A DNA stretch of 64,000 nucleotides from Octopus sinensis (GCF_006345805.1 NC_042999.1:56792001-56856000); one strand, 5' to 3'; shown: positions 21,801 to 44,100, counted from the stretch's first letter. The notes: a model not told the origin generated them from the letters alone. Translations and numbers: made by a program.

Positions 21801-24800
21801 TTTCTTCTTTTGACTTCAGTAAATACTATTGACAGTGTTGTTGTTTAGCCTGAGCTCAGATCAACCTTGACTGAGCAGTCATGATTAGAAGCACTCCAGC
21901 CATGATTATTCCATGATTTGGTATATTTAAGTACTACATCGTCAAAAATATGCTTTCTCTTTTTAAAATGCTTGGGTGTAATTTGGCTGCTTTTTCTAAC
22001 AGGTCAGGTGACCACACAGAGGTTCATTGTTGCTGCCGGTACTATTGCAACACCAAATAGCAACTTATAAGTGTCTTTTCTGTAACAAGTTATCTAATTC
22101 ATTTTCTTTGGAAGTAGTTAATTTTAATATGGAAATAAAAAAATGCAAGAAATTTCAACATTATCAATAAATACCCAACAAATATATTAACTATAAGCAA
22201 CAACATAAGATGTGAAGATAACTGCCAAGGCACAATTGTTTAGAGAAAGAAAATAGATTTTTTTTTAACAAAACAACACTAAAATCAGTTATAAAATATA
22301 TATTTAACTTAGAATGGAAAAAGATTTTTTTAATATTAAGTCAAATCATTTTCCTAAGGAAAAATAAGTAATAACATTTATCTTGAATAAATAATCTATA
22401 AAGTTAATAAGTCTAATTGACGTTAAGATTAGATTTATATAAGAAATAGGATTTATTTAAAAGCTTTAGGAGGCATTGACTGATTTAAGAGGGTCATTGT
22501 GGTAGTTGGCTGGGATTTGTAGGTGTAGGAGATGTAATTGTTGAAAATGTTTTTATGTAAGAGAGGAATTTCAGAAAAGACAATTCCTTTTTCAGCAGAA
22601 TGAAAGGTAAACTGAATATTAAGAATGAGTTTAACCCTTTAGCATTCAGACTACTCTGTCAAACGTCATGTTTATTGATTCACATTGTTTTGAATAATCA
22701 TGCATTACCTTGTAGCTTCATGATTCTGAGGATGAGATTGTTTATTTTTAGAATGATATTGTGTAGGGTAGGTGTGAGAGGCTGGATCTGACCTGTCTGA
22801 ACATAAAACAGGTAGAATATTTTGGCCTGATATGACCAGTTTACATGCTAAAGGATTAAGGTAATGAGAAACAGATGGTGTGTAAAGCAAAGAAAAAAAA
22901 AATAGCAGTATGAGATCCAGCCCCAATTTTGTCCTTTAACTAATAATGATATCTTTGGCACAAATCCACAAATTTGTAGGCAACTGGGAAAATAATGAAT
23001 TAAACTGAAGCCCCAGCTATTTGTCTGGTACTTGTTTATATAAGACTCGAGGTGAAAGGTAAAAATCAAATCTAATTCTGATAGGATTTGAACTCAGATG
23101 TAACTTCTCATAACTATTGATGCAATACAGAATTATTTCAAATCCTCAACCTTCAGCCTGCTAATGTGTCTTTTTCCTTTTTCTTTTGTTTTTTTTCTTG
23201 TAGCAAAAATACATTTTGAAGCCTAGTTGTGAAAACACCTACAAATTATTAAGAGCAGCAATGTATTTGGTATTGTTGCTGTCCCTTTCTCACCCAGTAC
23301 ACCTAATACTACAGACTGTCAGAAGCAAAACAACTCCTTGATAGAAAATATAATATATACATAAATTTGACCTATATATTGTTGTATAGTTAAACAGCCA
23401 TCGGCAACAAAGATTGTGATTTGGTATTTCTGTGTTGAGAATAACTGGCTGATTAAAACATTTCCCAGTATGGCACCGCAATGATGAACCAACCAGGCTA
23501 TCAGATATTGCTACACATCGCTGGTCACAATGCGCTTCGCATTGTTATAGCCTTCAAATGACGCCACCCTGCTGGCTAAGCGAGCAGGCCAACCGAATTA
23601 AGAGTGAGAGAAATTTGTGGCGAAAGAGTACAGCAGGGGTCGCCACCACCCCCTTCCGCAGCCTCGTGGAGCTTTAGGTGTTTTTGCTCAATAAACACTC
23701 ACAACGCCCGGTCTGGGAATCGAAACCGCAATCCTACAACCGCAAGTCCACTGCCCTATCCACTGGGCCATTGCACCTCCACATATTGTTGAATAGTTAA
23801 ACAGCCATCAGCAACAAATATTGTGATTTTCTATTTCTGTGTTGAGAATAACTGGCTGATTAAAACATTTCTCAGTATGGTACCGCAAAGATGAACGCCA
23901 TTTATAAATCTTATTGCAGCGTCGACATCGATAATGTTGACTGCCATGCTGACCACGCATGTGAGTGGAAAGAGAGTCTTTTGACGAACAAGTCTGCTCA
24001 CAGATGTTACATCGAAACAACTCACCACCATGGTGCTTTGTACGACCACAGAAACGTTTATGGGACAACAAACTTTTTTTGAAACGAAATGTTAAATTAC
24101 ATCGGTCACATTTTTCTTCTAGTATGTGATGTTTGTCAATGTGAGCTTTGTATGTCCAGAAACTATCAAAACCACGACCGCATATTGAGCAGTTAAATAG
24201 AAATTTTCCAAGGTGTTTAGAATTCATGTGACTCTGCAATCCATATTGAGTTTTATAGTGCTGACCACATTGTGGACAAGATATATTCCCAGCATTAAAC
24301 AATGGCAATGGATCAGCCAGAACTGTTTGCTGAAGTTGACCATCAAAGTTGGCATTGATATTTAGAGCAGAGTCTCTGTGGTACATGCTGACATGATGAA
24401 GCAGAAGTTCTTGAGAACTGGTTGAAAATATGCACTGGTTGCAATCATAGATGTCAGGGCCAATGTTAACCTTCTGCTCATGTTCTTCTACAGCAGTTGA
24501 CAGTTCTGCAAGCTCTGTGAACACATTGGAAGATTCTTCTATGGGTTTTGTAATTTCAAAGGTTTCTGGAAGTGGAAATGAAATGTAAGATGGAATATAA
24601 ATATTAGTTATCCAAATATTAGTTACCTAAAAATTACAAGATTTTAGTAAAAATTTACAAACAATTAACTATTAATCAAAAAATATTTTCTTTTATCATA
24701 AAAAACTCTTGTAGGTAAGTAGTGAGAGCACTGTCACTTGAATTAACACCAGAATATTATTACTATTTCACTGACTATTTTGAGCGATTAAAGCAAAGCT

Positions 24801-27800
24801 GAGACTGACAACAGTTCGGTCAACTAAAAATTTAAAAAGTACATTAGTCACGGGAACACAACAAGGGATTTTACCTGTTCCACACTCATCTTTTTCAGTC
24901 ATTACCCAACCTCATCTTGCTAAACAACCCTCATGGATCACAACTCTTACTTTTTCAGAATAAAGTGATATGAATCTTAATTATACTGTATGATCTTTAG
25001 TCTGATGCTCTTTTATTCTCAATCTGCCACTCTCAAATACCTTATTGTTTTTGGTAAAGGGCTTTAGTCTAAAAAGCCCTTTATCTTATGGCACACTTAA
25101 TTTTGTGAACTTTATCAATTGATTTTTTTGCCACGGCAAATGTGATGTCAAATTAATAAAATGATGGCTTTGCTTATTTCCAAAGTCTTTCCATATCACT
25201 AATATTCATAGTAAGGTTAAATATGGTGGTAAGAAAAAAAAATCAGAGGAAACCTTTTTTGAGTATTTCATATGCTATATGCACCTCAATTTTGGCAGGC
25301 TTTTCCATTGTTTCAACATCCAATTCAGAGAGAATTTATTGAGGCAGAATTTCTGTGGTTGGATTCTATTTCTATCGTCAACCACACCTCAGTCCAAGCA
25401 AGGTAATATTTTCTCATGACCAGACATGCTTTTGCAAAATATTGGTAATGAATGACACTGCTTGTATGTCAGTGACACTCATTTACAACTACCACGCAAT
25501 ATTAACACAGAAACATAGTCATACACACATGACAGGATTCTTACAGTTTCCATCTACCAAATCCACTCACAAGTCTTTGGGGCTATAGTAGAAGATACTT
25601 ACCTAAGGTGCCATGTTGTGAGACAGAACCCAAAAACAAATGGATAAAAGGCAAACTTCTTAACCACACAGCCATGCATGAACCTTAACCATACCTTCAC
25701 TTTGTGCAACATAGTCGCACAATATATAAACAATATATAAACAGGCACAGGAGTGGCTGTGTGGTAAGTAGCTTGCTTCCGGGTTCAGTTCCACTGCGTA
25801 GCACCTTGGGCAAGTGTCTTCTACTATAGCCTCGGGCCGACCAAAGCCTTATGAGTGGATTTGGTGGACGGAAACTGAAAGAAGCCCTTCGCATATATAT
25901 ATATGTATGTGTGTGTGTGTGTATATGTTTGTGTGTGTGTTTGTCCCCCCAACATTGCTTGACAACTGATGTTGGTGTGTTTACGTCCCCATAACTTAGC
26001 GGTTCAGCAAAGAGACCGATAGAGTAAGTACTAGGCTTACAAAGAATAAGTCTTGGGGTCGATTTGCTTGACTAAAGGCGGTGCTGCAGCATGGCCGCAG
26101 TCAAATGACTCAAGTAAAAGTGTAAAAGAGAATGTATTTGTATACATGTACAAAGTATATGTATATACACATAGTTGTATAACACATATACAGACTGTAC
26201 AGTTACACACTTTGTAACTTAATATATATATTACAAACTAAAAAAAAATCATTACACTAGGCATTGAAAATATCAAAACGAAATAACACTTAGATACACA
26301 TATACATACACTCCATATACAAACAAATGCCAGAATTTTTCAAAAATTCTGAACTGCTATATAAAAAAAATTCAAGTGTCTTTCATCCTTGTGAACTTAA
26401 TGAAGTAACTACTGAACAAATACTGGATTGATATTAGTTATACTATTGAAGGTGGTGCCCTCTAGCATGGCTACAATCCAATAACTGAGGAAACCAGTAA
26501 AAATATAAAAGAAATAAGTACTTAGCACAGATCAAATTGCAGTTCTAGTTGACCAAACACATGGCACGAATGCAGGTAGTCAGTCAAACAACTAGGTAGG
26601 TTAAACACACGTCTGCTGTTCTCATTTAGGGATCAGTAAATTTCATATATAATAAACCCCTTCATTGTATTGTTGATAGCTTATTGTAACCCCAATCATG
26701 AAGATTTCTTAAATAAAATAATATACAATGATTTGAGAGGAATAGACAAAAAAATTAAAATGCTTATGTCATCATAGTAAGAGTTCTGGTCTACTGACTG
26801 ATCTGATACTCCTAGATGATAGAGAATTGGTATGACTTTTTAGGGATGACATCTGAAAGGATTCCAAAAATCCTTGAAATTGGAGTAAGCAAGGCAGACT
26901 CATCAAACACACTTCTGTGAGCACTTCATACCAAAACTTATATTGCTGTTGTCATAAGTGCAAGCAGCAGAGACAAAGTTTTCAGACACCAAATTTGTCT
27001 GGTCAACAATAAATATTTTGCCTCGCTTACTGCAACTATAAGGATTTTAAAAAATCCTTCCAAATTCCATCCCTAAAGAATCTTACAAATTCTCTATCAT
27101 CTCAGGGCATCAGAGCAGTCAGTAGACCTGTCAGTTTTCTTGCTAAGTTAACCTTGAGGCCCTTAAATTCCAGGTTTTGCTTCCACAACTGAAATTTTTC
27201 ATCTAGCTCTGATATGGAATTCACTATGATGGCAAGATCATCAGCATATAGTCATTCCCATGATGAAAAGGAGGGGACTAAGGTCCAAACCTTAATAAAC
27301 CCTTACCTGTACACCAAATTCTTCCCTTTTACTTGTGGTTAACTCTCACCTTACAGTATCTTCGTACATGGCTTGTACAGCTCTCACCAGCCACTTGTCT
27401 ATACCTAGACTTCTCACAGCCCATCATATCACACAGCAGGGCACTCTACAGAAGGCTTCCTCTAGATCAACAAATGCCAATTATAATGGCTTATTCTTAG
27501 CTAAGTACTTATCTTGCAGTTGCCTGACTATGAAAATAATGTCAGTAGTGTTTCTTCCCCGGACAAAGCAGAACTGCATTTTGTCTAGCCTAATTCTGCT
27601 CCTAACTAACTGGGCAATAACTCTCTAATTTTCATCACCTGGTTCAGCAGATTGATGCCTTTAAAGTTGCTACCCTGTTAGCAGCTAACAATTGTGCTGC
27701 TAAGCCAGTCACCGGGTATCACACCTTGAATGACCTGATTAAACTATGTAGGGTGACCAGCCTGTATCCTATCTTACCGGATAGTTGAAGAAATTGACTC

Positions 27801-30800
27801 TAGTACTTATTTTTGAGGTCTGGTAGTTATCAGTCTCTTTATGTGAACTGCTAAGTTATGATAACTTAAACCAATACCGGTTATCAGCTGTGACTATATC
27901 ATTTTTAAAATTAGTAACCAAATCTCATATCTCACTCTATCATCGTAAAAAGGGGACACACTGGATAGTAATAATGATGATGATGATACAAAAATGATCA
28001 TTGCTTGGAATTGCAAGGGTCCTCTGCAGAGTTCGTGAAGTATGATTAGTAAACAGGTGTCACCTTAGTTAACTGGCTGTGGGTAGCTGACACTTTCCAC
28101 CACATCCAGCAAAATAAAGCTGAGATTTTTCATGAAATAATAATAATAATAATAAATGCCCTGATGCAATACCAGACAGTGGCTCTCATGGTTTCTGATC
28201 TTAACTGATAGGAAGTGTTATCATGTACATTGTTTTATCTTGGTATAAAAGATGGGCGTCAGCAAATATTCTGCTCAATACCACAGATTTGCTTGTCAGT
28301 TGTTTGACCATAACCAGTTGAGCATGTCCCTTAGTGGCTGACGATACGTGCATCTCTGATCACGAGCAGAAGTAGTGGAAGAGCATCATAGCTGTGTGTT
28401 GAAAGGAATTCTTAGAGGTTTGGATAATTCACCTTTGGAAACATGGGTGGATCATTCAATATCCTTAAACAATCCTTATTCAGGGACATCTTGAGCTGGA
28501 TGGGCTACTTGACCAGAAGAAAATTCTAACCGGGCCCCACCTGCAAGGTCATGTGCTGTTTATCTTGAAATGAGATCACCATGTCCCACACATATGGTTA
28601 TGATGCATGTGCCTAGTGTACCTTTATCAGACGGGTAGTCATGATGGATATACTGGGCTTGGTATATTTTACCCCAGTGTCACTTTGATGGCTTGCACTA
28701 CTCTCTCACTCAATAATAATATTAATAATAATAAAAACTACAGTTTTCAAGACTGAGGTACCCTTGATCGAAACGTTTGAACACCAACAACAGCAGTAGC
28801 AGTAATATGAATTTTACATTTCTGAATGAAATAAGCAAACAAACATTTACAAGAACATAACGATAAATAATGTAAATATATACACAATAATTACCATACA
28901 AGTAAATAATGGCAAACGTGCGTGTATGTATAAATATGTGTGAGTGTGTGCGTATACATACACATATACATTATATTTAAGGAGGTGAGCTGGCAGAATC
29001 GTTAGCATGTCAGGTAAAGTGATTAGTGACATTTCATCTGTATTTGCACTCTCGGTTCAAATGCCGCCAGGGTCATTCTACCTGGTCAGCTCCTGTCAAC
29101 CATCCTCCCCATGCATGCATGGAAGATGGATATTAAATGATGAGGATGACAATGACAAGCTTCTTTCAGTTTCTGTCTACCAAATCCACTTACAAGGTTT
29201 TGGTCAACCTGAGGCCATAGCAGAAGACACTTGCACAAAGTGCTATGCAATGGGATTGAAACCAAAACAGTGTGGTTGGGAAGCAAGAATCTTACCACAC
29301 AGACAATATATATATATATATATATACATCATCGTTTAATGCCTGTTTTCCATGCTAGCATGGGTTGGACGGTTCGACCGGGATCTGGGAAGCCAGGAGG
29401 CTACACCAGGCTCCAGTCTGATCTGGCAGTGTTTCTACAGCTGGATGCCCTTCCTAACGCCAACCACTCCGTGAGTATAGTGGGTGTTTTTTGTACGTGC
29501 TACCGGCACAGGGGCCAGAGGAGGCTGGCAAACGGCCACGATCGGTTGGTGCTTTTATGTGTTACCGACATGGACGCCAGTCAGGCGGCACTGGCATCTG
29601 TCACGTTCAGACAATGCTTTTTATGTGTCACCGGCACAGATATATATATATATAGGAGATGACAAATGACTGCAACAAACTCAAAGTATTATGCTGAAGA
29701 AGACCAATCCAAATCAGGTAGCATGGAGGGATGTGGCTACTGAGTTGGTGGTGGTGACGAGGGATGGGTTGGGTGGTGATGTTTTGTTATGAAAACTCAA
29801 ACATAAATGCTAAGATATACAAACACACATTGAGAGACTACAACATTCAAGAAATACAGATATACTCATAGACAGACAACTATATATACACATTATGCAT
29901 ACTCACACATAGATATATACATAGAGCTGTACACTCATGAAACACATACAATACAGTTATACTCACAGTCAGACCTCTATGCATGTTACATACACACACA
30001 CACACGAGGTCAGTTACACCAAATAAGGACTGACCTGGGATATGATGATTCATTCAACCTATACCAGTATGGAAAAAATTGTGGTAAAAATGGTGATGAT
30101 ATTTTATATTATACTAGCACTATGACCCGGCATTTTGCCGTTTATATATAGAGAGATATAAGGAGGTGAGTTGGCAGAATCATTAGCATGCTGGGTAAAA
30201 TGATTAGTGACATTTTTTCTGTCATTATGTTTTGGGTTCAAATGCTGCCAGGGTTGACTTTGCCTTTCATCCTTCCCAGGTTGATAAAATAAGTACCAGT
30301 TGAGCACTGGGGTCAATGGGATCTACTTAGCCCCTCTCCCAAAATTGCTGGCTTTGTGTCAAAATTTGAAGCCAATATCCTATGTCCTCCATCTTCCACC
30401 AGATCATCCTGTCAGGGCTTTACTCTCATTTGAGGTAGCAGCTACAGGCTGCTGGAGGTATCATGGCAGGCCCCGCACCAGATGGGTGGACATGATTGGG
30501 GAAGATCTCCAGAGGCTCGACATCACTGTGGAGGATGCAGGAGAGCTGGCACAGGGACCACCAGTGATGGAAAGCACTAGTGGATCTAGTTGGCTCTACA
30601 CATGATGATGTCTGAGTCTGAGACCACCAACTTGGAATGACCCCAGCCCAATCAAGCAAGACCAGGACCTACCTAGTAGTCAAAAGAAAACAGAACACTA
30701 CTAATCGGAAAGTGGCCATCTTTAATATAGAGAGAGAAAGTAAAAAAGATGTAGGAGGATTGCTAGCAGGCTGACAAAGGATTTCCTATCTTAAAAATGC

Positions 30801-33800
30801 ATAGGAATAGTTAGTTGATGGCAAGAGCGGAGGTAAGTGTCGCAAAAGCATAGTAATCAAGGTAAGGATGAAGTGAAGAATGTTCAGGGAATTTATCTAC
30901 TTTGTCAGTAACAAAGAACTTCTTTCTGCAAATGAAGAGTAGACTGTACAACACTTTTATACAAAGTGTGGTACAATATATGGTAGTGCTCATGGGCACT
31001 GTGCATGGGGATATATTAAAAGCTGAAAAGAAATGGAGTATGCTCCACTAGGTGTGTGAGAGTAATGTGCAAGAACAGCAGAGCACCAGTGTGTTGGGTG
31101 AAAAACTCCAGCTTTAGAGGTATCAGAATAAATGATTCAGAGACAGTTAATTCTTGTATTATATCAACCTGCTTGAGGCTACTTCTGTTTTAAATTAAAA
31201 TATTCCACCATGACTTATAAATAAAAACCTCTTTTATGTTCCAAACACCACCATAATAATGAAAAAGTTATTTGACTAAATTCCCATCAATTTCTTGATT
31301 ATTTAAAAAAAATTAATTGAAACACAAAATAGTCACAAAAGGGTTCAGTAAGTATTGAACGACAGAGACCGTCTCTTTGTGGCTGGTGACTTCAATGGGC
31401 ATGTTGGACAACATGCTGGAGGCTTCTATGGCGTACATGGAGGCTACGGTTATGGTTCCCGCAATGAGGAGGGAGCCAGGCTGCTGGAGTTCTGTGATGC
31501 AAATGATCTTATGGTTTACAACACTAACATCAGGAAACCTACCAGCCACCTAGTCACCTACCGATCGAGCCGACATACTAGCCAAATTGACTACATCCTT
31601 GCCAGAAAAAGGGAAAGATGGCTGCTTATAAATACCAAAACCTTCCCAGATGAAGAATGTACCCAACAACATAGACTGGTTGTTAGTGACTTTAGGATCA
31701 GGACTAAGAGGACAACCAGAAGACGACCAGCATGGAGAAGAAGGGTCTGGAAGCTAAAAGATCTTGCAAATGGACAGAGATTTAGAGACATATTACTTGA
31801 AGCCTTTGACGAAATAGAAGGGGATATAGTTTCACATGGAGTAGAAGACAACTGGAGGTTTCTAAGGGACAACCTGCTGAGAGCCACTGACCAGATCTGT
31901 AGATGGTGCAAAGTCCCATATAAACCCAAAATAACGTGGTTGTGGAACAACATTGTAGACAGGGCTATCAGAGAAAAGAGACAGGCTTGGAAGGGCTGGA
32001 AGAATGGTGGTAGCAGGGAATCATATCAGACTGCCAGAAGAGAAGCTAGGAGACAGGTCTATTTAGCCAGAGGGGAAGCAGATAAGAAAAAATTTGCCAA
32101 TGTTCTGCGCTGTGAGGACCAAAGACTTGAGGTATTTCGTGTTGCAAGGCAGTGTGTGAGAGAGAATCGTGATGTGGTAGGAGAGAAATGTGTTCACATG
32201 GATGATGGTTCACTTGCGCTAAATGAGGCTGCAAAGAGAGAGGTTTGGAGACGCCACTATGAAAGGTTGCTGAACAAAGAAAATGAATGTGAGAAAGAGA
32301 GTCTGCCGATTGTCGACCCAACAGAGGGATCAGCTATCCAATTTGACAGTACCTTGATAGTTAAAGCAATTAAAAGTATGAAGACAGGGAAAGCCCCCGG
32401 CCCATCAGGAATTACTGCAGAGATGCTCAAAATAACTGGCAGTGTCGGCATTAGCCTGGTCACCCATATAGTTAACCAGGTGAGTCATACCCAATGACTC
32501 GTGTAGCAGCACTATAGTCAACTGCTACAAAGGAAAAGGTGACGCTTTAGATACAAATAATTACAGAGGTATCAAGCTCTTGGATCAGGTAATGAAGACC
32601 ACGGTGAGGGTCATAGCCCAACTAATTAGGGAGAGAGTCAGTTTAGATGAGATGCAGTTTGGTTTCATACCAGGGAAAAGCACCACTGATGCTATATTTC
32701 TGGTTAGACAGTTGCAGGAGAAATACCTAGCCATAGATAAGCCCCTGTACCTGGCTTTCGTTGACATGGACAAAGCCATTGAAAGGGTCCCCTGATCCCT
32801 TATCTGGTGGTCAATGAGAAAACTAGGGATAGATGAATGGTTAGTGAGAGCCGTGCAAGCCATGTACAGGGACGCTGTCAGTAAGGTGAGGGCTGGTAAC
32901 AAGTACAGTGAAGAATTCTGGGTAGAGGTAGGGGTCCACCAAGGTTCAGTCCTAAGCCCCCTCCTATTTATCATAGTCCTCCAGGCAATAACAGAGGAAT
33001 TCAAGACAGGATGCCCCTGGGAGCTCCTCTATGCTGATGACCTTGCTCTAATTGCTGAGTCACTAACAGAACTAGAAGAGAAGTTTCAAGTGTGGAAAGA
33101 AGGATTAGAATTGAAGGGCCTTAGTGTCAACCTAGCTAAAACCAAAGTCCTAATATGTAGGAAAGCAGGCAAACCACAAATTCCTTCAGGTAAATGGCCC
33201 TGCTCGATCTGTAGAAAAGGTGTAGATAGAAACTCTATAAGATGTACCCTGTGTAAGCTATGGACACATAAGTGCAGCAATATCAAAGGAAGGCTAACTG
33301 GGAGGATAGTTTCTGTATGTGGTAGATGCTTGAGAGCTATATATAACACTGAAAATGTGCAGAGAACAACTTCCGCCACATTCCAGGGAGAAAAACTAGA
33401 AGTAGTTGATAGCTTCCGTTACCTAGGTGACCAAATCAGTAGCAGAGGAGGGGGCACTGAAAGTGTAGCTGCTAGAATAAGAATAGCCTGGGCTAAGTTC
33501 AGAGAGCTCTTACCTCTGCTGGTGACAAAGGGCCTCTTGCTCAGAGTAAAAGGTAGACTGTAAGATGCATGTGTACGAACAGCCATGCTACATGGCAGTG
33601 AAACATGGGCTGTGACTGCTGAGGATATGCGTAAGCTCGCAAGGAATGAAGCCAGCATGCTCCGATGGATGTTTAAGTACCCTGAGAGAAAGGTTGGACC
33701 TAAGAAGCATCAGATGTGGTGTGCAAAAGAGACGACTGCGCTGGTATGGTCATGTGTCGAGAATGGATGTAGATAGCTGTGTGCAAAAGTGCCACACCCT

Positions 33801-36800
33801 AGCAGTTGAGGGAACCTATGGAAGAGGTAGACCCAGGAAGACCTGGGATGAGGTGGTGAAGCATGACCTGCAAACATTGGGCCTCAGTGAGGCAATGACT
33901 AGTGACCGGGACCTCTGGAAATATGCTGTGCTGCAGAAGACTCGGCAAGCGCAAGTGTGACCATAACCTTGTGGCCTATGCTAGGGGGTAACCAGTCCAC
34001 TTATGCATGCCTTCTCTTCATTGGACACTAAACTCTGCTTGTGAAGACCAGTTGAGGCAAGTGAAATTGAAGTCGAAATCAAACTCGGTGACTGGCATCC
34101 GTTGCTAGTGGAGCGCTAAGAGTACCATATGAGTGAGATCGTTGTCTGAGCAACAAACTGGCCTTCGTGCCGGTGGCACATTAAGCACACCATTCGAGCG
34201 TGATCGTTACCGCGTCGCCTTACTAGCACTTGTGCTGGTGGCACATGAAGCATTCGAGCGAGGACGTCACCAGTGCCGCTGGACTGGCTCCTGTGCAGGT
34301 GGCACGTAAAAAGCACCATTTGGATGTGGCCGTTGCCAGTACCACCAAACTGGCCCCCGTGCCGGTGGCACGTAAAAGCACCCGCTACACTCTCGGAGTG
34401 GTTGGCGTTAGGAAGGGTATCCAGCTGTAGAAACTGCCAGATCAGATTGGAGTCTGGTTCGCTAGACCTCAGTCAAATCGTCCAACCCATGCTAGCATGG
34501 AAAGCGGATGTTAAATGATGATGATGATATTCAATGCAGAGAGCCAAGACTGTGAGATAGTGAAACACATAAGGCTAACAAGTGACAAAAATATCTTGGG
34601 CCTAAAAGAAACCATCTGAATTTCAGTCAGATGTAGATGTGATTTCCATATAGAGGAGGAAAGATCTGTCTTGGTATAGTTTTATACACAAGATTTTATG
34701 GGAATTAGCAGAAAAAAAACAAAACAACTTTGGTCTATAATGATATGAAGTTTTATGAAATTTATGAAACTATAATGAACAAAGTTATAAGAATTGTGTA
34801 AACAGTAAAATAATAATGGAGAAACACAAATGATGGCAGCAAGGGAAAATAAATAATAATGAGAACAGTAATTCTTTTAGGCTGAGTAAACCAAATTTTA
34901 TAAAACAGACACATCTCTCAATTTCAGTGGCATGTGTTCCTGTCATTGAATCAATGGAACTGTTTATTCATTGATTATAATGCAAATGGCAAAGTATTTT
35001 AGACACTGGTACCATTGACTTAATACCAGAGTAGGATCAGTGACACATTATATGATATGACTGGCTGATTATTTAATATCCTTCACAAGATTCAGGCTGA
35101 CTCAAGGCCATGAAATAAAAGACTTGTTCAAGGTACTTTGCAGCAAAATCAAAACTTTTTGATTCAGAAAATTCTTAACTGTATTCTGCTCTTGAAGCAT
35201 AATACAGAAAGGACATGACAAGACAAAACTCACAAAAGTGACCACTGTAAACCTGAAAAACAGATTGTTGACTATGGTGGTGGTGATGATGATGATGATG
35301 ACAGCAATAACAGGTGACAATGACAAAATTTTACAAAAGAATTAGGTCAACTACCTGGATCTGCTTTGCTACATTTGTGCAACCATGTGTATTTTGTCAT
35401 AATTTGCCGATAAAGATCCTGACCATAACTTTCAAAAGCAGTTGTCCCCAACAGTTTCACATTATCTTCAAATTCCTACATTTTTCAAAGAAAAAAAAAC
35501 AAGAAATAACAATAAAACAAAATAATTAAGCTTCATCAATTAATCAAAGACAAAACAAAAAGAGGCAATGCAGTTGGAACATTAAACATCAATAACAATA
35601 ACAAACATAAGGACTATTACCTTGGAAATATTTAATAAGACTTTATATTACATGTAAAATGATCCTTTCCAATGGTGTTAAAGCAACTGGAAGGAAACAT
35701 GACTGGTTGACATATGGGTTCTGCATAACTATAACCAAAAGATCTCATATGCAGAGATGAAGAATTTTCGGCTGTGGATTATGTTCCATGGACTGTGATG
35801 AATGCAAGAAACTGGACCAGGTATTGTCAGATACAGTGACTGAAAGAAGTGGCTATAGTAGCCACTGCAGCTCATTCAATTTCAACCAGTCCTGGAAGGT
35901 TGATTTATGTCTTTTGATCAGAATGGCTTCTTTAATCTGTAGGTTACCAACTATACTGACTGTGGTTTTGAGTGACTGCCCTATCTTTATTTATGTTCCT
36001 AAATTTATCAAAGTGTTTCATGAACAATGATGTCCATCTAGAGATGTTTGTTGATTCAGATATTACATAGCACTGGCTATGTAATATTCATGACTGAACC
36101 TGGTACACACATAGCAGATGGGGTAGTTGGCCACAATGTATAGGTTTGTCATTGGAGAGTTACTTCTGAGATGAACATTTCCATAGGTGAAAGTCAGTGA
36201 ACAGTTGCATTTCCAGCTCTTCTTTATGGATAGCCTTGTAGGAAACAGCAGTTATACTATCACTAAAGAGTAGAAAACAGGTGTTGGAAGAGGTTTTCCA
36301 TTTCTTGCTTGAGAACTCTGAAGATGACTAACAACAGATGCTAAGAATTCATTTTTGACTTTCAGCATCTTCTGGAACCGTGTGATATGGAAAGCCCATT
36401 CTTTTGTCTCACTGCATTCAAGGCAGATATAATGAAGTTCTTTGTATATACCTAGTCAAACACTGATAGGAAGAACTGGTCTGTAGCAGACAGATAGATT
36501 TCTGATGATGGCTTTTTTGTAGATGTCTGCTCTATCTGTAATTGCAAGTTAGCTTTTCTGAATTAAATTGTACATTAAAAAATATACATGGTTGAATGAT
36601 GAAATTAATAATTCTTTGCAAGTTTGGCAGAAGGCCAGGAAAAAATTAATAAATAATAACATTCAAGAAGTGCTTATGAGGTACCCTATTTCTTTATATT
36701 TTTCCTCGTATGTTTTCATTGGTTCCAGTCATTAGACTCTGACAGTATTGGAGCACTGTCTTGAAAGATAGAGTTGTTTAAAACAACCATGGTACTTGAC

Positions 36801-38103
36801 TGGCATTTATTTTATTAATTATGAGAAGATGACCAGCAAAGTCAACCTGGACAGTTCCTTTTTTTTAATTATTATTTAGAGCATAGAGGAAGGTATTTAG
36901 AGCATAAATACCATGAACAGCTACCACGGGCTACTTTGTGAGGTGTTCTACCAATCATGACATACCATTTCAATATTATGAATGAGAGCCAACAAAGCAA
37001 CATAATACGGTTACTAAACCTGTAAGAAATAGTTGCCATATTTCCCTCAAATTCTACCCCACTGTGTGGTGGCCTGTGAGCCTCAATGACTGAGACATAG
37101 AGCTATTCCAGTGGAGCACAAGCCCCTGGTAGAGCTTCTCTTGCTGGACAGGAGAACAGAAACAGGCCGGACAAATATAGACCACTTCTTCCAGAGGTAA
37201 AAAATGGGTCTGCATAGGGCTGATACATCATCATCATCGTTTAACGTCCGTTTTCCATGCTAGCATGAGTTGGACGGTTCAACTGGGGGTCTGGGAAGCC
37301 AGAAGGCTGCACCAGGCCCAGTCTGATCTGGCAGTGTTTCTAAAGCTGGATGCCCTTCCTAACGCCAACCACTCTGAGAGTGTAGTGGGTACTTTTTATG
37401 TGCCACCTGCACATACACTGTCTAGAAAAAAAAAACAGTTACAGAAGCACTGATGACAATTCAAAACCAGCAACACCTGGGAGAAGGCCTCTCAGAGAAA
37501 TGATGTGATGCAACAAAATCTGAATGGAAACCAATATCCGGTATTATACATCAGGCTCTGACCTGGAACTTACAAGGAAGGTGGAAGAGAAGACACCCTA
37601 AATCTAGATGGAGGGGGGATACGGAGGTAGAAATCAAAAAGGAGGGATCCTAATGGATAAAAACAGAAGAGATAGTCCAGAGTCAAGAAAAGTGGAGAAA
37701 ATTGTCTATGGGCTATATTCAATTGGGAATGATGGGCTTAAGTAAGAAACTCTATATCTTGGCAAAAAAAGACAGGGTTGTAACAACTGGAATGTTTCTG
37801 ATCATAGGGTTAGCTTGATCAGGACTCCTTGGGTTAAAATAATAATCCACTCACCTTTGATAGCACCATATTGTTTCCAAAGGATGTTTCATCAAAGTAA
37901 ACAGTTGCTAATTGCTCTGAAATGATGATATAAAAATATTAAGGTTAGAAGATTTACTTTTTGCCTTTTATATTACAAATAGTGAAGAATAACAGATCAC
38001 ACTTTCTCAATGGATCAATCTATGCAGGAACTTTGTTCAAAAAGAACAATTTCAGAAATATTTCTTGTTGATGTGTACAACTTTTGCCTATGTATATTGG
38101 TGA

Positions 38104-38157
<54 letters not shown>

Positions 38158-41100
38158 CTAGTTGTTGAGGGAACCTGTGGAAGAGGTAGACCAAGGAAGA
38201 CCAGGGATGAGGTGGTCAAGCATGACCTTCGAACATTGGACCTCACTGATGCAATGACTAGTGACCAGGACCTTTGGAAATATGTTGTGCTTGAGAAGAC
38301 TCGGCAAGCCAAGTGAGACCATAACCTCGTGGCCTATGCCAGGGGTGTAACCAGCCCACTTGTGCATACCTTTTCCTTCTTTGGACACTAAACTCTGCTT
38401 GCAAAGACCTGTTGAGGTAAGTGAAATCGAAATCAAATTCAATGACTGGCATCCATGTTAGTGGAGCGCTAAGAATACAATCTGAGCGTGATCGTTGCCA
38501 GAGCAACAAACTGGCTTCCGTGCCAGTGACATGTAAAAAGCACCATTCGAGTGTGATCGTTACCCGCGTCGCCTTACTGGCACTTGTGCTGGTGGCATGC
38601 AAAAAAACATTCAAGCAAGGTTGTTGCCAGTGCCGCTGGACTGGCTCCTGTGCAGGTGGCACATAAAAAGCACCATTGAGCGTGGTCGTTGCCAGTGGCA
38701 CGTAAAAGCACCCACTACACTCTTGGAGAGGTTGGCGTTAAGGGCACCCAGCTGTAGAAACTCTGCAGGATCAGATTGGAGCCTGGTGCAGCCATCTGGT
38801 TCGTCAGACCTCAGTCAAATTGTCCAACCCAGCTATCCCTAGTTTCCAAACTGACCATCAGATAAGGAATTGGGGGACCCTGTCAAAGGCTTTCTCCATG
38901 TCAACGAAAGCTAGGTACAGAGGTTTATCTTTGGCTAGGTATTTCTCCTGCAGCTGTCTTACCAGAAATATAGCATCAGTAGTGATTTTCCCTGGCACAA
39001 ACCCAAACTGCATCTCGTCTAAACTGACTCTCTCCCTAATTAGTTGGGCTATGACCCTCTCCAGGACTTTCATTACCTGATCCAACAATCTGATATCACT
39101 GTAATTATTTGTATCTAATGCATCACCTTTACCTTTGTAGCAGTTGACTGTGGTGATGCTACACCAGCCATTGGGTATGATTTCTTCATGCATCACCTGA
39201 TTGACTATATAGGTGACTAGACTGTAGCCGACACCGCCAGATATCTTAAGCATTTCTGCGGTGATTCCTGATGAGCTGGGGGCTTTCCCTGTCTTCATAC
39301 CCTAAATTGATTTATCTACCAAGGTACTGTCAATTCAGATAGCTGGTCCCTCTGTTGGCTCAACATTTAGCAACCTTTCATAGTGGTGTCTCCAAGTCTC
39401 TCTCCTTGCAGCCTCATTAAATGCAAGTGAGCTGTCATCCATGCAGACACATTTCTCTCCTATGACATCATGATTCTCTCTCACACTGTCTTGCAACAAG
39501 AACCAGCTCAAGTCTTTGGTCCTCACCACACAGAACATTTGCAAACTTTTTCTTATCTGCTTCCCCTCTGGCTAAGTAAACCTGTCACATAGTTTTCCTT
39601 CTGGCAATCTGATACAATTCTCTCCTCCCGCCATTCTTCCAGTCCTCCCAAGCTGGTTTCTTTTCCCTAATGGACCTGTCAATTACACTGTTCCACCACC
39701 ATGTTACCTTGGGTTGAGAGGGGACTTTGCACCATCTACAGATCTGGTCAGTAGCACTCAACAGGTTCTCCTGTACAAACCTCCAGTTGTCTTCCACATC
39801 ATATCTCCCTGTATTTTGTCAAAAGCTTTGAGTAATACATTTCTAAATCTCTGTCCATTTGCAGGATCCTTAAGCTTCTAAACCCTTCTTCTCCATGTTG
39901 GTCGTCTTCTGGGCATCCATTTAGCCCTGATCCTGAAGTTGCTAACTACTAATCCATGTTGTGGGGTGCATTCTTCACCTGGGAAGGTTTTGGCATTTAT
40001 AAGTAGACATCTTTCCCGTTTCCTGGTGAGGATGTAATCAATTTGACTAGTGTGTCTACTAGATCGGTAGGTGAATAGGTGGCTGGCAGGTTTCCTGAAG
40101 TTAGTATTAAAAACCATAAGATCACTTGCACCACAGAATCCAACAGCCTGGTTCCCTCCCCATTGCAGGAACCAAAACTATAGCCTCCATGTATGCCATG
40201 ATAGACTACTGCATGTTGTCTAACATGCCCATTGAAGTCGCCAGCTACAAAGCGAAGGTCCCTGTCATTCGTCGTCGAGGTAATCTGCAAGAGGGTGTCA
40301 TAAAATCAGTCTTTCTGTTCATCAGGTAGCCTCAGCTGAGGGGCATAGGACGAGATAATGATTGCTAAACCATGTTGCAGCACTAATCTAATCTGAAGTA
40401 TTTTATCACAGATTCTGACAAGAAACTTATTTAATTACAAATAAAGTATGAATTAATATCAAAGTTTACAGCATGAAATTACTCTTGCACAGTTTGAGAA
40501 GCATATAATTACTGACATGTTCAAGGAGCCTGTGGCTCCTTGCTTTCTCAGTTTGGTGTAAGATATAGCAGTTAAAATGACAAAAAATATCAAAAATGAT
40601 TTACTTTGATTAAGTTTAACAGACTGAGCTCTGTAATCCTCAATTTCTAAATCCTTTTTGGAAATAATATGAATAAGTTCTCTCTGGCGACGATTCAACT
40701 CGGACACCATCATTAAAAGTGGAATAGTCATGTTCTCAGAGACCTGATGACAAAGGAAAAATAGAAAGAAAACTAAAATAACAATATAGTTGAAAAATTC
40801 TAAAATCAAAATTATTTTATATACTTTCAGAATATTTTTCATCACAAATATATAAGAAGGCTTAGAAGCAGACTTAGACTAAAATACACACAAGAAAGTC
40901 TGCAGTTCTGATAAATGAATTCTTTATTAACTCATCCAAGAAAAATAAATAAATAAATAACTGTAACAAAGAAAATTGATAAAAATTACCATTTCTTCAT
41001 GTGCTGGTTCTCCAACCAATTGCCAGGTGAAAGGGAACCTAGAAAGTTTGGAATTAATCCATATATGCATAGTTCCTTTGTCATCTTTGGAAATTCTCAA

Positions 41101-44100
41101 ATTGTCAGACGGATTTTTATCAATATTCAGTTTAATATGCTCAAGAATTTTAGAAATTGGAGCTTCTAGATTGGGATTAAGTTCCTAAAACAAAGTAAAA
41201 TAAATTAGAAATTATAGCATCATTTTATAATAAATAAAACTGAGATAAAATTATAGCTGCATCAATAAATCAGAGTGAAGCATGAATTTATATTAAAGTT
41301 CCTAGGCATGTTTCACCATTATGGTTGTTTGGAGCCCTGCAATAGAATGAAACATACTAAGAATACATGGTTAATAAGTTCAGTTTGAATCTCTATGGAA
41401 ACCTTTTCTTACAACAGTCATCTAAATTTCTCAGTCAATAAAAAAACAAAAAAAAAGCGAAACAGCCAACTGTGAAGATAATTCTTTCTGCTTTTATTTT
41501 TTTATATTCTTTTATTTGTTCCAGCCACTTGATTGTGGCCATGCTGGAGCAATACCTTTGGTCAAACAAATCAACCCCAGAACTTATTCTTTGTAAGCCT
41601 AGTACTTATTCTACCAGTTTCTTTGCCGAACCGCTAAGTTCCGGGGATGAAAACACACCAGCATCAGTTGTCAAGTGATGGTGGGGGGGGGGACAAACAC
41701 AGATACACAAACAAATACACACAAACACACACATATATACGACGGGCTTCTTTCAGTTTCCGTCTACCAAATCCACTCACAAGGCTTTGGTCGGCCCGAG
41801 GCTATAGTAGAAGACACTTGCCCAAGGTGCCACGCAGTGGGACTGAACCCAGAACCATGTGGTTGGTAAGCAAGCTACATACCACACAGCCACGCCTGCA
41901 GTACTTCTTTCGAGTAACCCATCATTGCTTGCTCCACTTTTCTCCTATGGAACCAGAGTTATCATGAAGTCTGTCATTTGAATGCTGATTTATGATGTGA
42001 TGGATATTTACTTCCATTGATCTATAAGTATTTCTTCATTCAGTTATTCACTTAACATTCAATTTTTTTTTTAACTCATGGATTAGATGGTGAGTTATTA
42101 GGGGCAAGATTTTATAGCCTAATGCACTTTTCAAATAAAAGGGTTTTTTTCTATTAGCACTCTTTTAAAGAGCAGAACAATAGGTCATAATGTCGACATC
42201 ATAATTTCACTTGAGTGGCAACAAGAATGGAATATCAACAATATTAACAATGCGCACGCGCGCGCACACACACACGTCTATAGGGTGTCCATAAATTGTG
42301 TTTACAACTTCCACAATTTATCATCAAGCTATGTTGCGTACAACCACTGGAGTTGTTTTGTGTGCCTGTGCTTTTTACATGGCACCAGCACAGGTAAAAA
42401 AAGATTCAATATAAAATGTATCAGTCACTGTCTGCATTAGAATAACCTGTTACTGCTGCTAGTTAAAATTGTGAAAAAAATAATATAAATACACTGTAGA
42501 TCAGCTGCAACAGTGGCTAGATCTCTTGACCCACACTGTACTTTATAAGCAACTTGCTGACACTCTCACACTGTACCTTGTATCTACAAAAACTACAATG
42601 GTGGGTGCAGTATATTTCTACATATAAATGAAGTATATTCTCCTGCATGTTATTGTTGTTTAGCCTATTCTGTCACGGCCATCACATTCATTTAATGTAT
42701 GTCAAGGAATACATTTCTCACTGAGTTGTACGTTTATTTATGATGGCAGTAGCTGCTGCTTTTCGCAGGTTGAGCAACCCTATAAAAGTTGGTTTGTGTC
42801 CCTTGCATGTTATATCTGTAGGCTCCTGCTCATAAATCAGTCAAAAGTTTCTATGCTGTTGATGTCACTGCTTGATGGAAGCTACACAGTAATTAGTTCA
42901 GATTAAGCATGACTGTTTGGTTAGGTGTGTTTCACATCCACGGGCTGTGGATTCAATTCCATTACATAACACTTATTATAGCCTTGGGTTGACAAATTAA
43001 TTGTGGGTAGAACAGAGTAGATGTAAACTGTAGATGGAAGCTCATCCGGGGGATTGTTTCTTTTCATAGGTGGTAAATGTCGTCTATCATTCAGTTTAAC
43101 ATCCCCATTTGGCCCCTGATTGCCTTTAGTGGAGTCTATTCTGTTACAAGTATTCAAGCTAGCTTTCTGCTCTGTGCATAACTTCCTGCCACCATTCAGA
43201 GAACCTGAAAAAAGGTCAAGATCACTACTCTAGGTATAGGCATGTGGTTAAAAAGTTTGCCAAGCAACCATATAGTTTTGGGTTCAGTCCCATTGCATTC
43301 TACTTTGGATAAGTGTCTGCTATTATAACATTGGGATGATTGTGAATTTGATGGATGGAAACTGCAGGAAGCCTTTGTGTGTGTGTGTAGAATATCCATA
43401 GATTACCATTACAATTTCAAAAATTCAGAGAAATAAGAAAAGTAAGGATAACTTAGAGTTTATTGCAAAACACAGGCACACAAAACAACTTTTATTAGAA
43501 AAATCAGAATATTTCCATGTAAGCTCCAGTGGTTGTGTGCAACATAGCTTGATGATAAATTGTGGAAGTTGTAAACACAATTTATGGACACCCTATAGAC
43601 GTGTGTGTGTGTGTGCGCGTGTGCATTGTTAATATTGTTGATATTCCATTCTTGTTGCCACTCAAGTGAAATTATGATGTCGACATTATGACCTATTGTT
43701 CTGCTCTTTAAAAGAGTGCTAATAGAAAAAAACCCTTTTATTTGAAAAACAGGTGAGGGCTGATGACAAGAAGTGCATTAGGCTATAAAATCTTGCCCCT
43801 AATAACTCACCATCTAATCCATGGGGTAAAAAAAAATTGAATGTTAAGTGAATAACTGAATGAAGAAATACTTATAGATCAATGGAAGTAAATATCCATC
43901 ACATCATAAATCAGCATTCAGATGACAGACTTCATGATAACTCTGGTTCCATAGGAGAAAAGTGGAGCAAGCAATGATGAGCTACTCGAAAGAAGTACTG
44001 CATTTTATATTGAATCTTTATTTACCTGTGCTGGTGCCATGTAAAAAGCACTCAGCACACTCTGTAAAATGGTTGGCATTAGGAAGGGCATCCAGCAATA

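What the first reader, a model, noticed from the sequence alone, without database searches (positions are those of the whole stretch)
23808..35475. Candidate XLF-zinc-finger fusion: a six-finger exon positioned as an alternative last exon of NHEJ1
Seen: the zinc-finger frame (24565-23808) is intact, on the same strand, and inside NHEJ1 intron 5. It has no ATG before finger 1 and an in-frame stop just upstream of a strong acceptor. That acceptor is phase 1, the same as the exon-5 donor (35355). Splicing gives an open protein of about 490 aa (...SKADP|ETFEITKPIEE...). I saw no non-repeat CpG-rich promoter-like stretch between 24566 and 35354. Established: the XLF head binds XRCC4, the coiled coil homodimerises, and the C-tail carries DNA- and Ku-binding functions. 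Drosophila lola and mod(mdg4) join a constant dimerisation domain to alternative zinc-finger exons. Inference: this isoform would replace the XLF tail with a putative sequence-specific DNA-binding array, possibly targeting or modulating NHEJ, or using XLF as a dimerisation scaffold for a transcription factor. I do not know of this architecture being described. One matching phase has about a 1-in-3 chance of coincidence, so transcript evidence is essential.
Basis: partly seen in the sequence, partly recalled or inferred. Interest (0 to 1): 0.8.

Follow-up and report, generated by a model that had tools for sequence, protein, structure and literature searches.

The report
Cephalopod XLF isoform with zinc-finger tail
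In octopus, cuttlefish and a third ten-armed cephalopod, the DNA-break-repair gene NHEJ1 (XLF) has a conserved, transcribed alternative last exon that replaces the Ku-binding tail with six C2H2 zinc fingers; this form is in automatic annotations but I found no paper on it.

Summary
The window is Octopus vulgaris NHEJ1 on the minus strand. An intact six-finger C2H2 exon (24565-23808) lies in the 26-kb intron between exon 5 (35475-35355) and exon 6 (9182-9019). Its acceptor is phase 1, like the exon-5 donor.

Splicing exon 5 to it gives exactly 490 aa, identical to RefSeq XP_029633395.1 (O. sinensis). A near-identical model is XP_014769226.1 (O. bimaculoides), so the fusion already exists as computed models, misnamed 'zinc finger protein 112'.

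I found transcript evidence in the ten-armed cephalopods (Decapodiformes):
- An intronless Sepia esculenta RNA-seq contig encodes XLF plus six fingers (586 aa).
- In a second decapodiform species, five independent runs give a 552-aa fusion.
- That fusion mRNA is 100% identical to the canonical mRNA for 1,010 nt, diverges exactly at the exon-5 donor, and ends in its own AATAAA and A-run.

The exon is under purifying selection (dN/dS 0.10-0.22). Abalone and scallop NHEJ1 loci lack it.

The isoform keeps the whole folded XLF dimer core but loses the Ku-binding tail. Its function is untested. I did not examine octopus junction reads. I found no paper describing it.

The parts
46251..48500 (-). Only CpG-rich stretch on the gene (observed/expected 0.9-1.4 against a window median of 0.26). 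It overlaps coding exon 1 and is the presumed shared NHEJ1 promoter.
47631..47828 (-). NHEJ1 coding exon 1 (ATG at 47828), start of the XLF head domain.
   Evidence: Pfam XLF E=2.7e-24
40990..41184 (-). NHEJ1 exon 2 (XLF head domain).
40605..40743 (-). NHEJ1 exon 3 (end of head domain, coiled coil).
   Evidence: Pfam XLF_CC E=2.7e-9
37855..37916 (-). NHEJ1 exon 4.
35355..35475 (-). NHEJ1 exon 5, the last exon shared by both isoforms. Donor GATCCAG|GTAGTT, phase 1. Its end matches the end of the crystallised human XLF core (about residue 238).
23808..24565 (-). Alternative last exon: acidic linker, finger 1, spacer, fingers 2-6, stop TGA at 23810-23808. Phase-1 acceptor CCACTTCCAG|AAACC. Fingers at 24443-24378, 24278-24213, 24191-24126, 24110-24048, 24011-23946 and 23927-23865.
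24020..24025 (-). Internal donor GTGAGT inside the zinc-finger exon (after HHG). The O. vulgaris model CAI9719355.1 uses it to make a 540-nt in-frame cassette (24565-24026) joined to exon 6. Present in three Octopus species, absent in decapodiforms.
9019..9182 (-). Canonical exon 6 (start of the disordered XLF tail). Phase-1 acceptor. Followed by a GC-AG intron (GAAG|GCATGT).
7148..7240 (-). Canonical exon 7 with stop. Basic C-terminus ...DKKKRGSKVRKRAA at the position of the human Ku-binding motif. Absent from the 490-aa isoform.
   Evidence: position of the human motif from PMC9237100
23376..23896 (-). 114-nt direct duplication of the exon's 3' end (23783-23896 and 23376-23489, 93% identical) flanking a 293-bp SINE-like insert (23490-23782). 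O. bimaculoides has one copy and no insert.

Best explanation
The exon at 24565-23808 is a real, conserved alternative terminal exon of cephalopod NHEJ1.

How it works. Transcription starts at the one promoter, over exon 1. After exon 5 the transcript takes one of two routes. It either splices to exons 6-7, giving canonical 323-aa XLF with a basic Ku-binding-type tail. Or it splices to the zinc-finger exon and is polyadenylated just after it, giving a 490-aa protein.

What the long isoform keeps and loses. It keeps the whole folded XLF core: the head domain that contacts XRCC4, the coiled coil, and the fold-back helices that make the homodimer. The disordered tail is replaced by an acidic linker and six tandem C2H2/C2HC fingers.

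Most likely function (inferred). It forms a dimer, or a heterodimer with canonical XLF, that binds nucleic acid through the fingers instead of through Ku. That would place XLF, and perhaps XRCC4-ligase IV, on specific sequences independently of Ku.

Origin. The exon was probably captured from a pre-existing six-finger module family before octopods and decapodiforms split.

Confidence, by part: about 0.9 that the isoform is real, conserved and selected; about 0.35 for the specific Ku-independent DNA-tethering role.
For: Shown:
- The exon, its phase and the 490-aa product are exact.
- Identical or near-identical isoform models exist in O. sinensis and O. bimaculoides beside the canonical 323-aa isoform of the same gene.
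- A Sepia esculenta larval RNA-seq contig is intronless and encodes XLF plus six fingers in one 586-aa ORF. The run is SRR25097168, with its origin given in PMC10571815. The junction GAACCAG|AGCTGTCG matches the genomic acceptor CCACTGTAG|AGCTATCC in a cuttlefish-like contig.
- A second decapodiform species gives a 552-aa fusion on five independently assembled contigs from five runs.
- That fusion mRNA and the canonical mRNA are 100% identical for 1,010 nt, including the 5' UTR. They diverge exactly at the exon-5 donor, and the fusion mRNA ends 58 nt after its stop with AATAAA and an A-run.
- Purifying selection: dN/dS is 0.165 (O. vulgaris vs O. bimaculoides), 0.15 and 0.22 (each against a third Octopus species), and 0.096 (two cuttlefish-type sequences). 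Between octopus and cuttlefish, synonymous sites are saturated (pS 0.83-0.90) while fingers 2-6 have pN 0.14.
- Fingers 2-6 are 79% identical between octopus and cuttlefish, against 66% for the XLF core. Their zinc ligands are invariant in four sequences. By my reading of the alignment, 18 of 20 canonical base-contact positions are invariant too.
- No Met codon precedes finger 1 in any species.
- There is no CpG island in intron 5.
- Exons 1-5 align to human XLF residues 9-238 (E=5e-18), the crystallised homodimer core (PMC2104711 abstract).
- The human Ku-binding motif is at 287-299, in the part that is replaced (PMC9237100).
- The finger array aligns in register with DNA-binding arrays of ZNF568, CTCF and PRDM9.
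- The abalone and scallop NHEJ1 loci have the same seven-exon layout but no finger anywhere in the gene or within 10 kb either side.
Against: - No octopus RNA reads were examined. For Octopus the junction rests on gene models whose supporting evidence I could not see.
- The O. vulgaris annotation gives a different use of the exon: a cassette joined to exon 6.
- One cuttlefish contig joins exon 4 directly to the zinc-finger exon, out of frame, so some splicing into this exon is unproductive.
- The window has no AATAAA or ATTAAA within 1,062 nt of the stop.
- The residue at human L115, the leucine lock for XRCC4, is Phe in cephalopods, and R64 is Asn. XRCC4 binding is therefore assumed, not shown.
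- Nothing here tests DNA binding, dimerisation or a role in repair.
- The AlphaFold2 model was too poor to use (mean pLDDT 43).
Confidence: 0.82

Rival explanations
1. The zinc-finger exon is a separate nested gene with its own promoter and first exon inside NHEJ1 intron 5. On this view the fused models are annotation or assembly chimeras.
For: - Nested genes are common in long introns.
- RefSeq named the long isoforms 'zinc finger protein 112'.
- Contigs L003-L006 carry the exon with 1.6-2.5 kb of upstream intron.
Against: - No Met codon precedes finger 1 in any of the species.
- The acceptor and its phase are conserved between octopus and cuttlefish.
- Six intronless contigs from six runs in two species carry exons 1-5 joined to it in frame.
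- Fusion and canonical mRNAs share an identical 5' UTR and 1,010 nt.
- There is no CpG island in the intron.
- L003-L005 are collinear with genomic DNA and end in an (AT)n run, so they say nothing about transcripts.
Confidence: 0.04
2. Splicing into the exon is noise. On this view the exon is a decaying zinc-finger relic that happens to have a usable acceptor, and the fusion protein has no function.
For: - One phase match has a 1-in-3 chance.
- Cephalopod genomes hold very many C2H2 genes (background knowledge).
- An out-of-frame exon 4 to zinc-finger transcript exists.
Against: - The frame is open and the zinc ligands of fingers 2-6 are invariant in octopods and decapodiforms, with dN/dS 0.10-0.22 and saturated synonymous sites between the two groups.
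- The fingers are more conserved than XLF itself.
- Full-length fusion contigs were recovered from six runs.
Confidence: 0.05
3. In Octopus the main use of the exon is as an in-frame cassette (24565-24026). This inserts the linker and four fingers between the XLF core and the normal Ku-binding tail (503 aa, CAI9719355.1). It is not used as a terminal exon.
For: - A consensus donor G|GTGAGT lies in phase 1, so the 540-nt cassette keeps the frame.
- The translation equals the deposited O. vulgaris protein exactly.
- The donor is present in three Octopus species.
Against: - The donor is absent in all three decapodiform sequences.
- Fingers 5-6, which the cassette would discard, are the most conserved part of the exon and remain under constraint within Octopus.
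- RefSeq models of two Octopus species use the terminal form.
- The two forms can coexist.
Confidence: 0.15
4. Functional rival: the fingers do not target repair. Either the isoform is a transcription or chromatin factor that uses the XLF core only as a dimerisation module. Or it is a dominant-negative form that soaks up XRCC4 or canonical XLF, because it cannot bind Ku.
For: - The isoform lacks the Ku-binding tail.
- It keeps the dimer core.
- A conserved acidic, helix-prone linker precedes the fingers.
- The lola-type precedent: a dimerisation domain joined to fingers (background knowledge).
Against: Nothing here separates these roles from Ku-independent tethering of repair factors. If the core were only a scaffold, its XRCC4-contact surface would be expected to be free to drift, but both isoforms share those exons, so sequence cannot tell.
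Confidence: 0.3

Closest known systems
Canonical XLF / Cernunnos (NHEJ1), e.g. human XLF (PDB 2R9A, 2QM4)
   Same: Exons 1-5 encode the XLF N-terminal head and coiled coil. Pfam PF09302 scores E=2.7e-24 and PF21928 E=2.7e-9. Phmmer to human XLF residues 9-238 gives E=5e-18. The same gene also makes an ordinary 323-aa XLF with a basic C-terminus.
   Different: The long isoform replaces the whole disordered tail, including the region of the Ku-binding motif, with six zinc fingers. The 19 XLF proteins retrieved from other molluscs (255-349 aa) have no fingers. The abalone and scallop loci have no such exon.
Existing computed models: XP_014769226.1 (O. bimaculoides), XP_029633395.1, XP_036356896.1 and XP_036356897.1 (O. 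sinensis), CAI9719355.1 (O. vulgaris), CAE1323626.1 (Acanthosepion pharaonis)
   Same: They carry the same fusion. The window's 490-aa product is identical to XP_029633395.1.
   Different: They are uncharacterised predictions. They have inconsistent names ('zinc finger protein 112', 'NHEJ1'), inconsistent 3' ends (490, 527 and 503 aa), and one is a truncated cuttlefish model.
Drosophila lola, mod(mdg4) and other BTB-zinc-finger loci with alternative 3' exons
   Same: Constant 5' exons encode a dimerisation domain, and an alternative 3' exon supplies the zinc-finger DNA-binding part (background knowledge, not tested here).
   Different: - Here there is one zinc-finger alternative against a non-finger tail, not a battery of exons.
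- The constant part is an XLF repair-factor core, not a BTB domain.
- There is no sign of trans-splicing: the fusion and canonical mRNAs are collinear with one locus.
APLF
   Same: An end-joining accessory factor that carries zinc fingers and interacts with Ku and XRCC4 (background knowledge).
   Different: APLF has PBZ fingers that bind poly(ADP-ribose), an FHA domain, and keeps a Ku-binding motif. The cephalopod isoform has classical tandem C2H2/C2HC fingers and lacks the Ku-binding tail. There is no sequence relationship.
Six-finger 'KWRSSL' module family (P0121, P0150, P0151, P0153, P0155, P0120, P0161; C-terminus of P0144 and P0047)
   Same: Same order of parts: finger 1, spacer, five tandem fingers. 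Same signature ...F/Y-K/R-W-R-S-S-L-x-Y-H... in the last finger, always 17-54 residues from the protein end. Single-stretch scores are about 105-115 bits.
   Different: These are anonymous proteins from unnamed eukaryotic contigs. None carries an XLF domain. Identity is about 35-40% by eye. The family has no curated name that I could find.

Membership tests
XLF / NHEJ1 family | XLF N-terminal head domain (Pfam PF09302) above the curated cut-off | tested here: met
   86.1 bits against a cut-off of 24.6, E=2.7e-24, residues 19-121 of the 490-aa product.
XLF / NHEJ1 family | XLF coiled-coil region (PF21928), and alignment to the solved human XLF homodimer core | tested here: met
   37.2 bits against a cut-off of 27. 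Phmmer to 2R9A, 7LSY and 2QM4 gives E about 5e-18, query 16-241 against human 9-238.
XLF / NHEJ1 family | Residues of the XRCC4 interface (human R64, L65, L115) | tested here: inconclusive
   L65 is kept, R64 is Asn, and L115 is Phe, conserved in all cephalopod sequences. Binding was not tested.
XLF / NHEJ1 family | C-terminal Ku-binding motif (basic cluster at the extreme C-terminus) | tested here: not met
   This holds for the 490-aa isoform only, which ends ...NHNICC after finger 6. The canonical isoform from the same gene ends ...KKKRGSKVRKRAA. Human motif residues 287-299 are from PMC9237100.
Classical tandem C2H2 zinc-finger array | Repeated C-x2-4-C-x12-H-x3-5-H(C) units with short linkers; Pfam zf-C2H2 above the cut-off | tested here: met
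   Six units. PF00096 scores 58.8 bits against 25.2. The array aligns in register to ZNF568, CTCF, Aart and PRDM9 arrays. Fingers 4 and 6 are C2HC.
Classical tandem C2H2 zinc-finger array | Sequence-specific nucleic-acid binding | not testable with these tools
   Only indirect support: 18 of 20 canonical contact positions in fingers 2-6 are invariant between octopus and decapodiforms, by my reading of the alignment.
Alternative last exon (splicing coupled to alternative polyadenylation) | Shared upstream exons, divergence exactly at a donor, own stop codon and own poly(A) site | tested here: met
   Shown in a decapodiform orthologue. L011 and L016 are identical for 1,010 nt and then diverge at the exon-5 donor. 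L011 ends with AATAAA and an A-run 58 nt after its stop. For the window itself the poly(A) site is not identified; the first AATAAA is 1,062 nt downstream.
lola / mod(mdg4)-type locus | Many mutually exclusive 3' exons, each encoding a different finger module | tested here: not met
   These six are the only credible C2H2 fingers in the 64-kb window, which covers the whole gene.
lola / mod(mdg4)-type locus | Constant N-terminal BTB/POZ dimerisation domain | tested here: not met
   The constant part is XLF head plus coiled coil. There is no BTB hit.
lola / mod(mdg4)-type locus | Trans-splicing of the 3' exons | not tested
   Nothing suggests it: the exon is on the same strand, inside the gene, with an ordinary acceptor.

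The most novel reading that the evidence does not exclude
Coleoid cephalopods have a sequence-directed end-joining factor. On this reading, a dimeric XLF core is delivered by a conserved six-finger array to defined genomic sequences, independently of Ku. There it recruits or sequesters XRCC4-ligase IV. That would couple break repair, or its suppression, to particular loci or repeats, in a lineage known for large, repeat-rich and heavily rearranged genomes.
Probability: 0.15. Interest if true: 0.85.

Novelty: new variant of a known kind. Interest (0 to 1): 0.62.

Why it matters
XLF is a core factor of classical end joining, and its domain layout (head, coiled coil, disordered Ku-binding tail) is usually treated as fixed across animals.

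Here one gene makes both the ordinary protein and a form in which the tail is replaced by a classical zinc-finger array. The switch point is exactly at the end of the folded core. The fingers have been kept under stronger constraint than XLF itself since octopods and decapodiforms diverged, which background knowledge puts in the late Palaeozoic.

If the fingers bind DNA, this would be a natural repair scaffold with a built-in address, something so far built only artificially. It would allow a direct test of what XLF can do without Ku.

If instead the XLF core is only a dimerisation handle, it is a new partner domain for zinc-finger transcription factors, and a clear case of exon capture creating a new architecture.

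Practically, the RefSeq names ('zinc finger protein 112') hide the relationship, and the 527-aa and 503-aa models need checking.

Tried and rejected
- Upstream exon 5 in the cuttlefish-like genomic contig L002: not within the 10 kb that could be fetched. Linkage in decapodiforms therefore rests on transcripts and the A. pharaonis model.
- Contigs L003-L006: first considered as possible octopus transcripts. They are collinear with intron plus exon at 83-87% identity, and three of the four end in an (AT)n run. I treated them as genomic and used them only for conservation.
- Exact-sequence look-up of the 490-aa protein in assemblies found nothing. No octopus transcript contig for either isoform turned up, so absence is uninformative.
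- The whole-library profile search with the finger exon was dominated by giant generic poly-zinc-finger proteins scoring by accumulation. Only the short single-module hits were informative, and their source organisms are unknown.
- The AlphaFold2 model from a 4-sequence alignment had mean pLDDT 43 and pTM 0.24. I did not use it and ran no fold search.
- ARAGORN and Rfam do not recognise the 293-bp insert as tRNA-derived. 'SINE-like' is my reading of its sequence, plus a second partial copy at 7686-7710.
- I looked for GT-AG boundaries that would turn the 407-nt repeat unit into the intron implied by the 527-aa O. sinensis models. By inspecting the sequence I found none, so those models stay unexplained.
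- Literature searches combining XLF or NHEJ1 with cephalopod, octopus, zinc finger or C2H2 found nothing relevant.

Full report
**What is in the window.** The window is Octopus vulgaris DNA. The deposited protein CAI9719355.1, from a 182-Mb O. vulgaris contig, is encoded here exactly; splicing its exons from the window reproduces it. NHEJ1 (XLF) lies on the minus strand. I fixed the coding exons by requiring an exact translation to the database proteins:
- exon 1: 47828-47631
- exon 2: 41184-40990
- exon 3: 40743-40605
- exon 4: 37916-37855
- exon 5: 35475-35355
- exon 6: 9182-9019
- exon 7: 7240-7148

. The zinc-finger frame at 24565-23808 therefore sits in the 26-kb intron between exons 5 and 6, on the same strand.

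**Check of the observation.**
- The frame is open for 252 codons. The chance of that at this base composition is about 2.6e-8.
- It contains six C2H2/C2HC fingers, the only credible ones in the window. It passes Pfam zf-C2H2 well above the cut-off.
- No Met codon precedes finger 1, and an in-frame stop lies 20 codons above the acceptor.
- The acceptor (TTCATTTCCACTTCCAG|AA) and the exon-5 donor (CCAG|GTAGTT) are both phase 1.
- The spliced product is exactly 490 aa.
- The genome is CpG-poor (median observed/expected 0.26). The only CpG-rich stretch lies over exon 1. Intron 5 holds only one borderline 500-bp segment, and that segment is a repeat.

**The fusion is already in databases.** The 490-aa product is identical to XP_029633395.1 (O. 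sinensis 'zinc finger protein 112-like isoform X3'). It is nearly identical to XP_014769226.1 (O. bimaculoides 'zinc finger protein 112 isoform X1'). Both are isoforms of the gene that also gives the 323-aa 'non-homologous end-joining factor 1' isoforms XP_029633396.1 and XP_014769227.1. The cuttlefish model CAE1323626.1 (Acanthosepion pharaonis NHEJ1) also runs from exon 5 into the orthologous exon. The O. vulgaris model CAI9719355.1 (503 aa) is different. It leaves the exon at an internal G|GTGAGT donor after finger 4 (cassette 24565-24026, 540 nt, frame-preserving) and continues into exons 6-7.

**Transcript evidence.**
- Contig L001 comes from run SRR25097168, which PMC10571815 lists among its Sepia esculenta larval transcriptome runs. 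It is 2,214 nt and intronless. It encodes a single 586-aa ORF with XLF head, coiled coil and six fingers.
- Its junction GAACCAG|AGCTGTCG matches the acceptor CCACTGTAG|AGCTATCC in a cuttlefish-like genomic contig, again in phase 1.
- A second decapodiform species gives a 552-aa fusion (P0183) on five separately assembled contigs from five runs. The contigs are 99.5-99.8% identical to one another.
- The canonical 377-aa isoform of that species is on L016. L011 and L016 are 100% identical for 1,010 nt, from the 5' UTR to the last base of exon 5, and unrelated afterwards. L011 ends 58 nt after its stop with AATAAA and an A-run. This is the signature of one promoter and an alternative last exon with its own poly(A) site.
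- A further cuttlefish contig (L007, SRR9970006) joins exon 4 directly to the finger exon. It skips the 121-nt exon 5 and so breaks the frame, which makes it an unproductive by-product.
- I did not see octopus reads. For Octopus the junction rests on gene models.

**Conservation.**
- The acceptor is identical in three Octopus species.
- Within Octopus the exon has dN/dS of 0.165, 0.15 and 0.22. Between two cuttlefish-type sequences it is 0.096.
- Between octopus and cuttlefish, synonymous sites are saturated (pS 0.83-0.90), while fingers 2-6 have pN 0.14 and 79% amino-acid identity. The XLF core is 66% identical.
- In the four-species alignment the zinc ligands of fingers 2-6 are invariant. 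Taking positions -1, 2, 3 and 6 of each helix, 18 of the 20 positions in fingers 2-6 are invariant (my reading). This suggests a conserved target.
- The internal cassette donor is present in three Octopus species and absent in three decapodiform sequences.

**Taxonomic range.**
- The 19 XLF proteins recovered with the octopus core include bivalves and gastropods of 255-349 aa with XLF domains only.
- I fetched the whole NHEJ1 loci of Haliotis cracherodii and Mizuhopecten yessoensis. They have the same seven coding exons, with intron 5 of about 1.8 kb and 0.5 kb. There is no finger-like sequence in the gene or in 10 kb either side.
- The exon is therefore an innovation on the cephalopod branch, present by the octopod-decapodiform split. 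Nautilus could not be examined.

**Where the exon came from.** A profile search of 1.8 billion representatives was dominated by giant generic zinc-finger proteins. It also found short proteins with the same layout: finger 1, spacer, five tandem fingers, and a last finger reading ...KWRSSLxYH... close to the C-terminus (P0121, P0150, P0151, P0153, P0155, P0120, P0161, and the C-termini of P0144 and P0047). None has an XLF domain. Their organisms are unknown. The simplest reading is that NHEJ1 captured a pre-existing six-finger module. This is inference.

**How it most likely works.**
- Shown: exons 1-5 align to human XLF residues 9-238. That is the crystallised homodimer core (XLF 1-233, PMC2104711 abstract; aa 1-227 in 2R9A, PMC9237100). 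The alternative splice therefore cuts precisely between the folded core and the disordered tail.
- Established for human XLF: L115 locks onto XRCC4, and residues 287-299, with four lysines, bind Ku (PMC9237100).
- In octopus, the canonical tail ends in a basic cluster (KKKRGSKVRKRAA), and the 490-aa form lacks it.
- Inferred: the long form still dimerises and may still bind XRCC4. The L115 position is Phe in all cephalopods, so this needs testing. It cannot be recruited by Ku, and it gains two six-finger arrays per dimer that resemble DNA-binding arrays.
- My preferred reading is Ku-independent tethering of the XLF core to specific sequences (about 0.35).
- The main alternatives are a transcription or chromatin factor that borrows XLF as a dimerisation module, and a dominant-negative regulator of end joining.

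**Comparison with known systems.** As a protein it is a member of the XLF family by its head and coiled coil, and it carries a classical C2H2 array. It fails the family's C-terminal Ku-motif feature by design. As a gene arrangement it works like lola-type loci: a constant dimerisation part plus an alternative finger exon. It is not one of them, because it has a single finger alternative and no BTB domain, and nothing suggests trans-splicing. APLF is another end-joining factor with zinc fingers, but its fingers are of a different type and it keeps its Ku motif.

**Verdict.**
- Observation: confirmed.
- Interpretation: supported for structure, open for function.
- Novelty: not a new sequence, since it is in RefSeq and UniProt as predictions. 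I found no description in the searchable literature, and the conservation and transcript evidence assembled here make it a credible new XLF variant.
- Interest: 0.62.

Noticed in passing
window 23376-23896 (minus strand): The last 114 nt of the finger exon and its immediate downstream sequence are duplicated (23783-23896 and 23376-23489, 93% identical) around a 293-bp SINE-like insert. O. bimaculoides has one copy and no insert. The downstream copy reads CGA where the exon has its TGA stop. The 527-aa O. sinensis models (XP_036356896.1 and XP_036356897.1) read from copy 1 into copy 2, yet I found no GT-AG boundaries for such an intron. A polymorphic insertion or an alignment artefact is possible.
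   Followed up: partly
window 23808-23850; L003 3200-3259: The exon's C-terminus differs by a frameshift among Octopus species. A third species ends ...NTDNTESRSMLLMAV, like decapodiforms (...QSMLLVQA / ...SLLLVQV). O. vulgaris and O. bimaculoides end earlier, at ...NHNICC / ...NHNLCC. The ancestral tail was probably ...SMLLxxV.
   Followed up: partly
window 9013-9019: The intron after canonical exon 6 has a GC donor (GAAG|GCATGT). It is a GC-AG intron, required for the exact translation of the 323-aa isoform.
   Followed up: yes
L007 (SRR9970006) 330-350: A cuttlefish transcript contig joins exon 4 directly to the finger exon (TCTCTCAG|AGCTGTCG). It skips exon 5 and shifts the frame, so it is probably an unproductive splice form.
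   Followed up: partly
window 31355-33960 (+), 38858-39298 (-): Fragments of non-LTR retrotransposons (endonuclease and reverse-transcriptase ORFs; Pfam RVT_1 E=2.5e-14 and 4e-8) lie inside NHEJ1: the first in intron 5, the second between exons 3 and 4. The first is antisense to the gene.
   Followed up: partly
P0121, P0150, P0151, P0153, P0155, P0120, P0161, P0144, P0047 (loci L009, L010): An unnamed family of roughly 200-aa six-finger modules with the signature KWRSSLxYH in the last finger, always near the C-terminus. They come from anonymous eukaryotic contigs. In L010 an acceptor-like TTTTGTTTTACAG lies just upstream of the module. They may be terminal-exon modules in other genes.
   Followed up: partly
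window 46251-48500: In a genome with CpG observed/expected of about 0.26, a 2-kb stretch over exon 1 has values of 0.9-1.4 at only 31-38% GC. This is an AT-rich, CpG-preserved promoter region.
   Followed up: no
window 7686-7710: A second partial copy (1 mismatch in 25 nt) of the box-B-like core of the SINE-like element, in the intron between exons 6 and 7.
   Followed up: no
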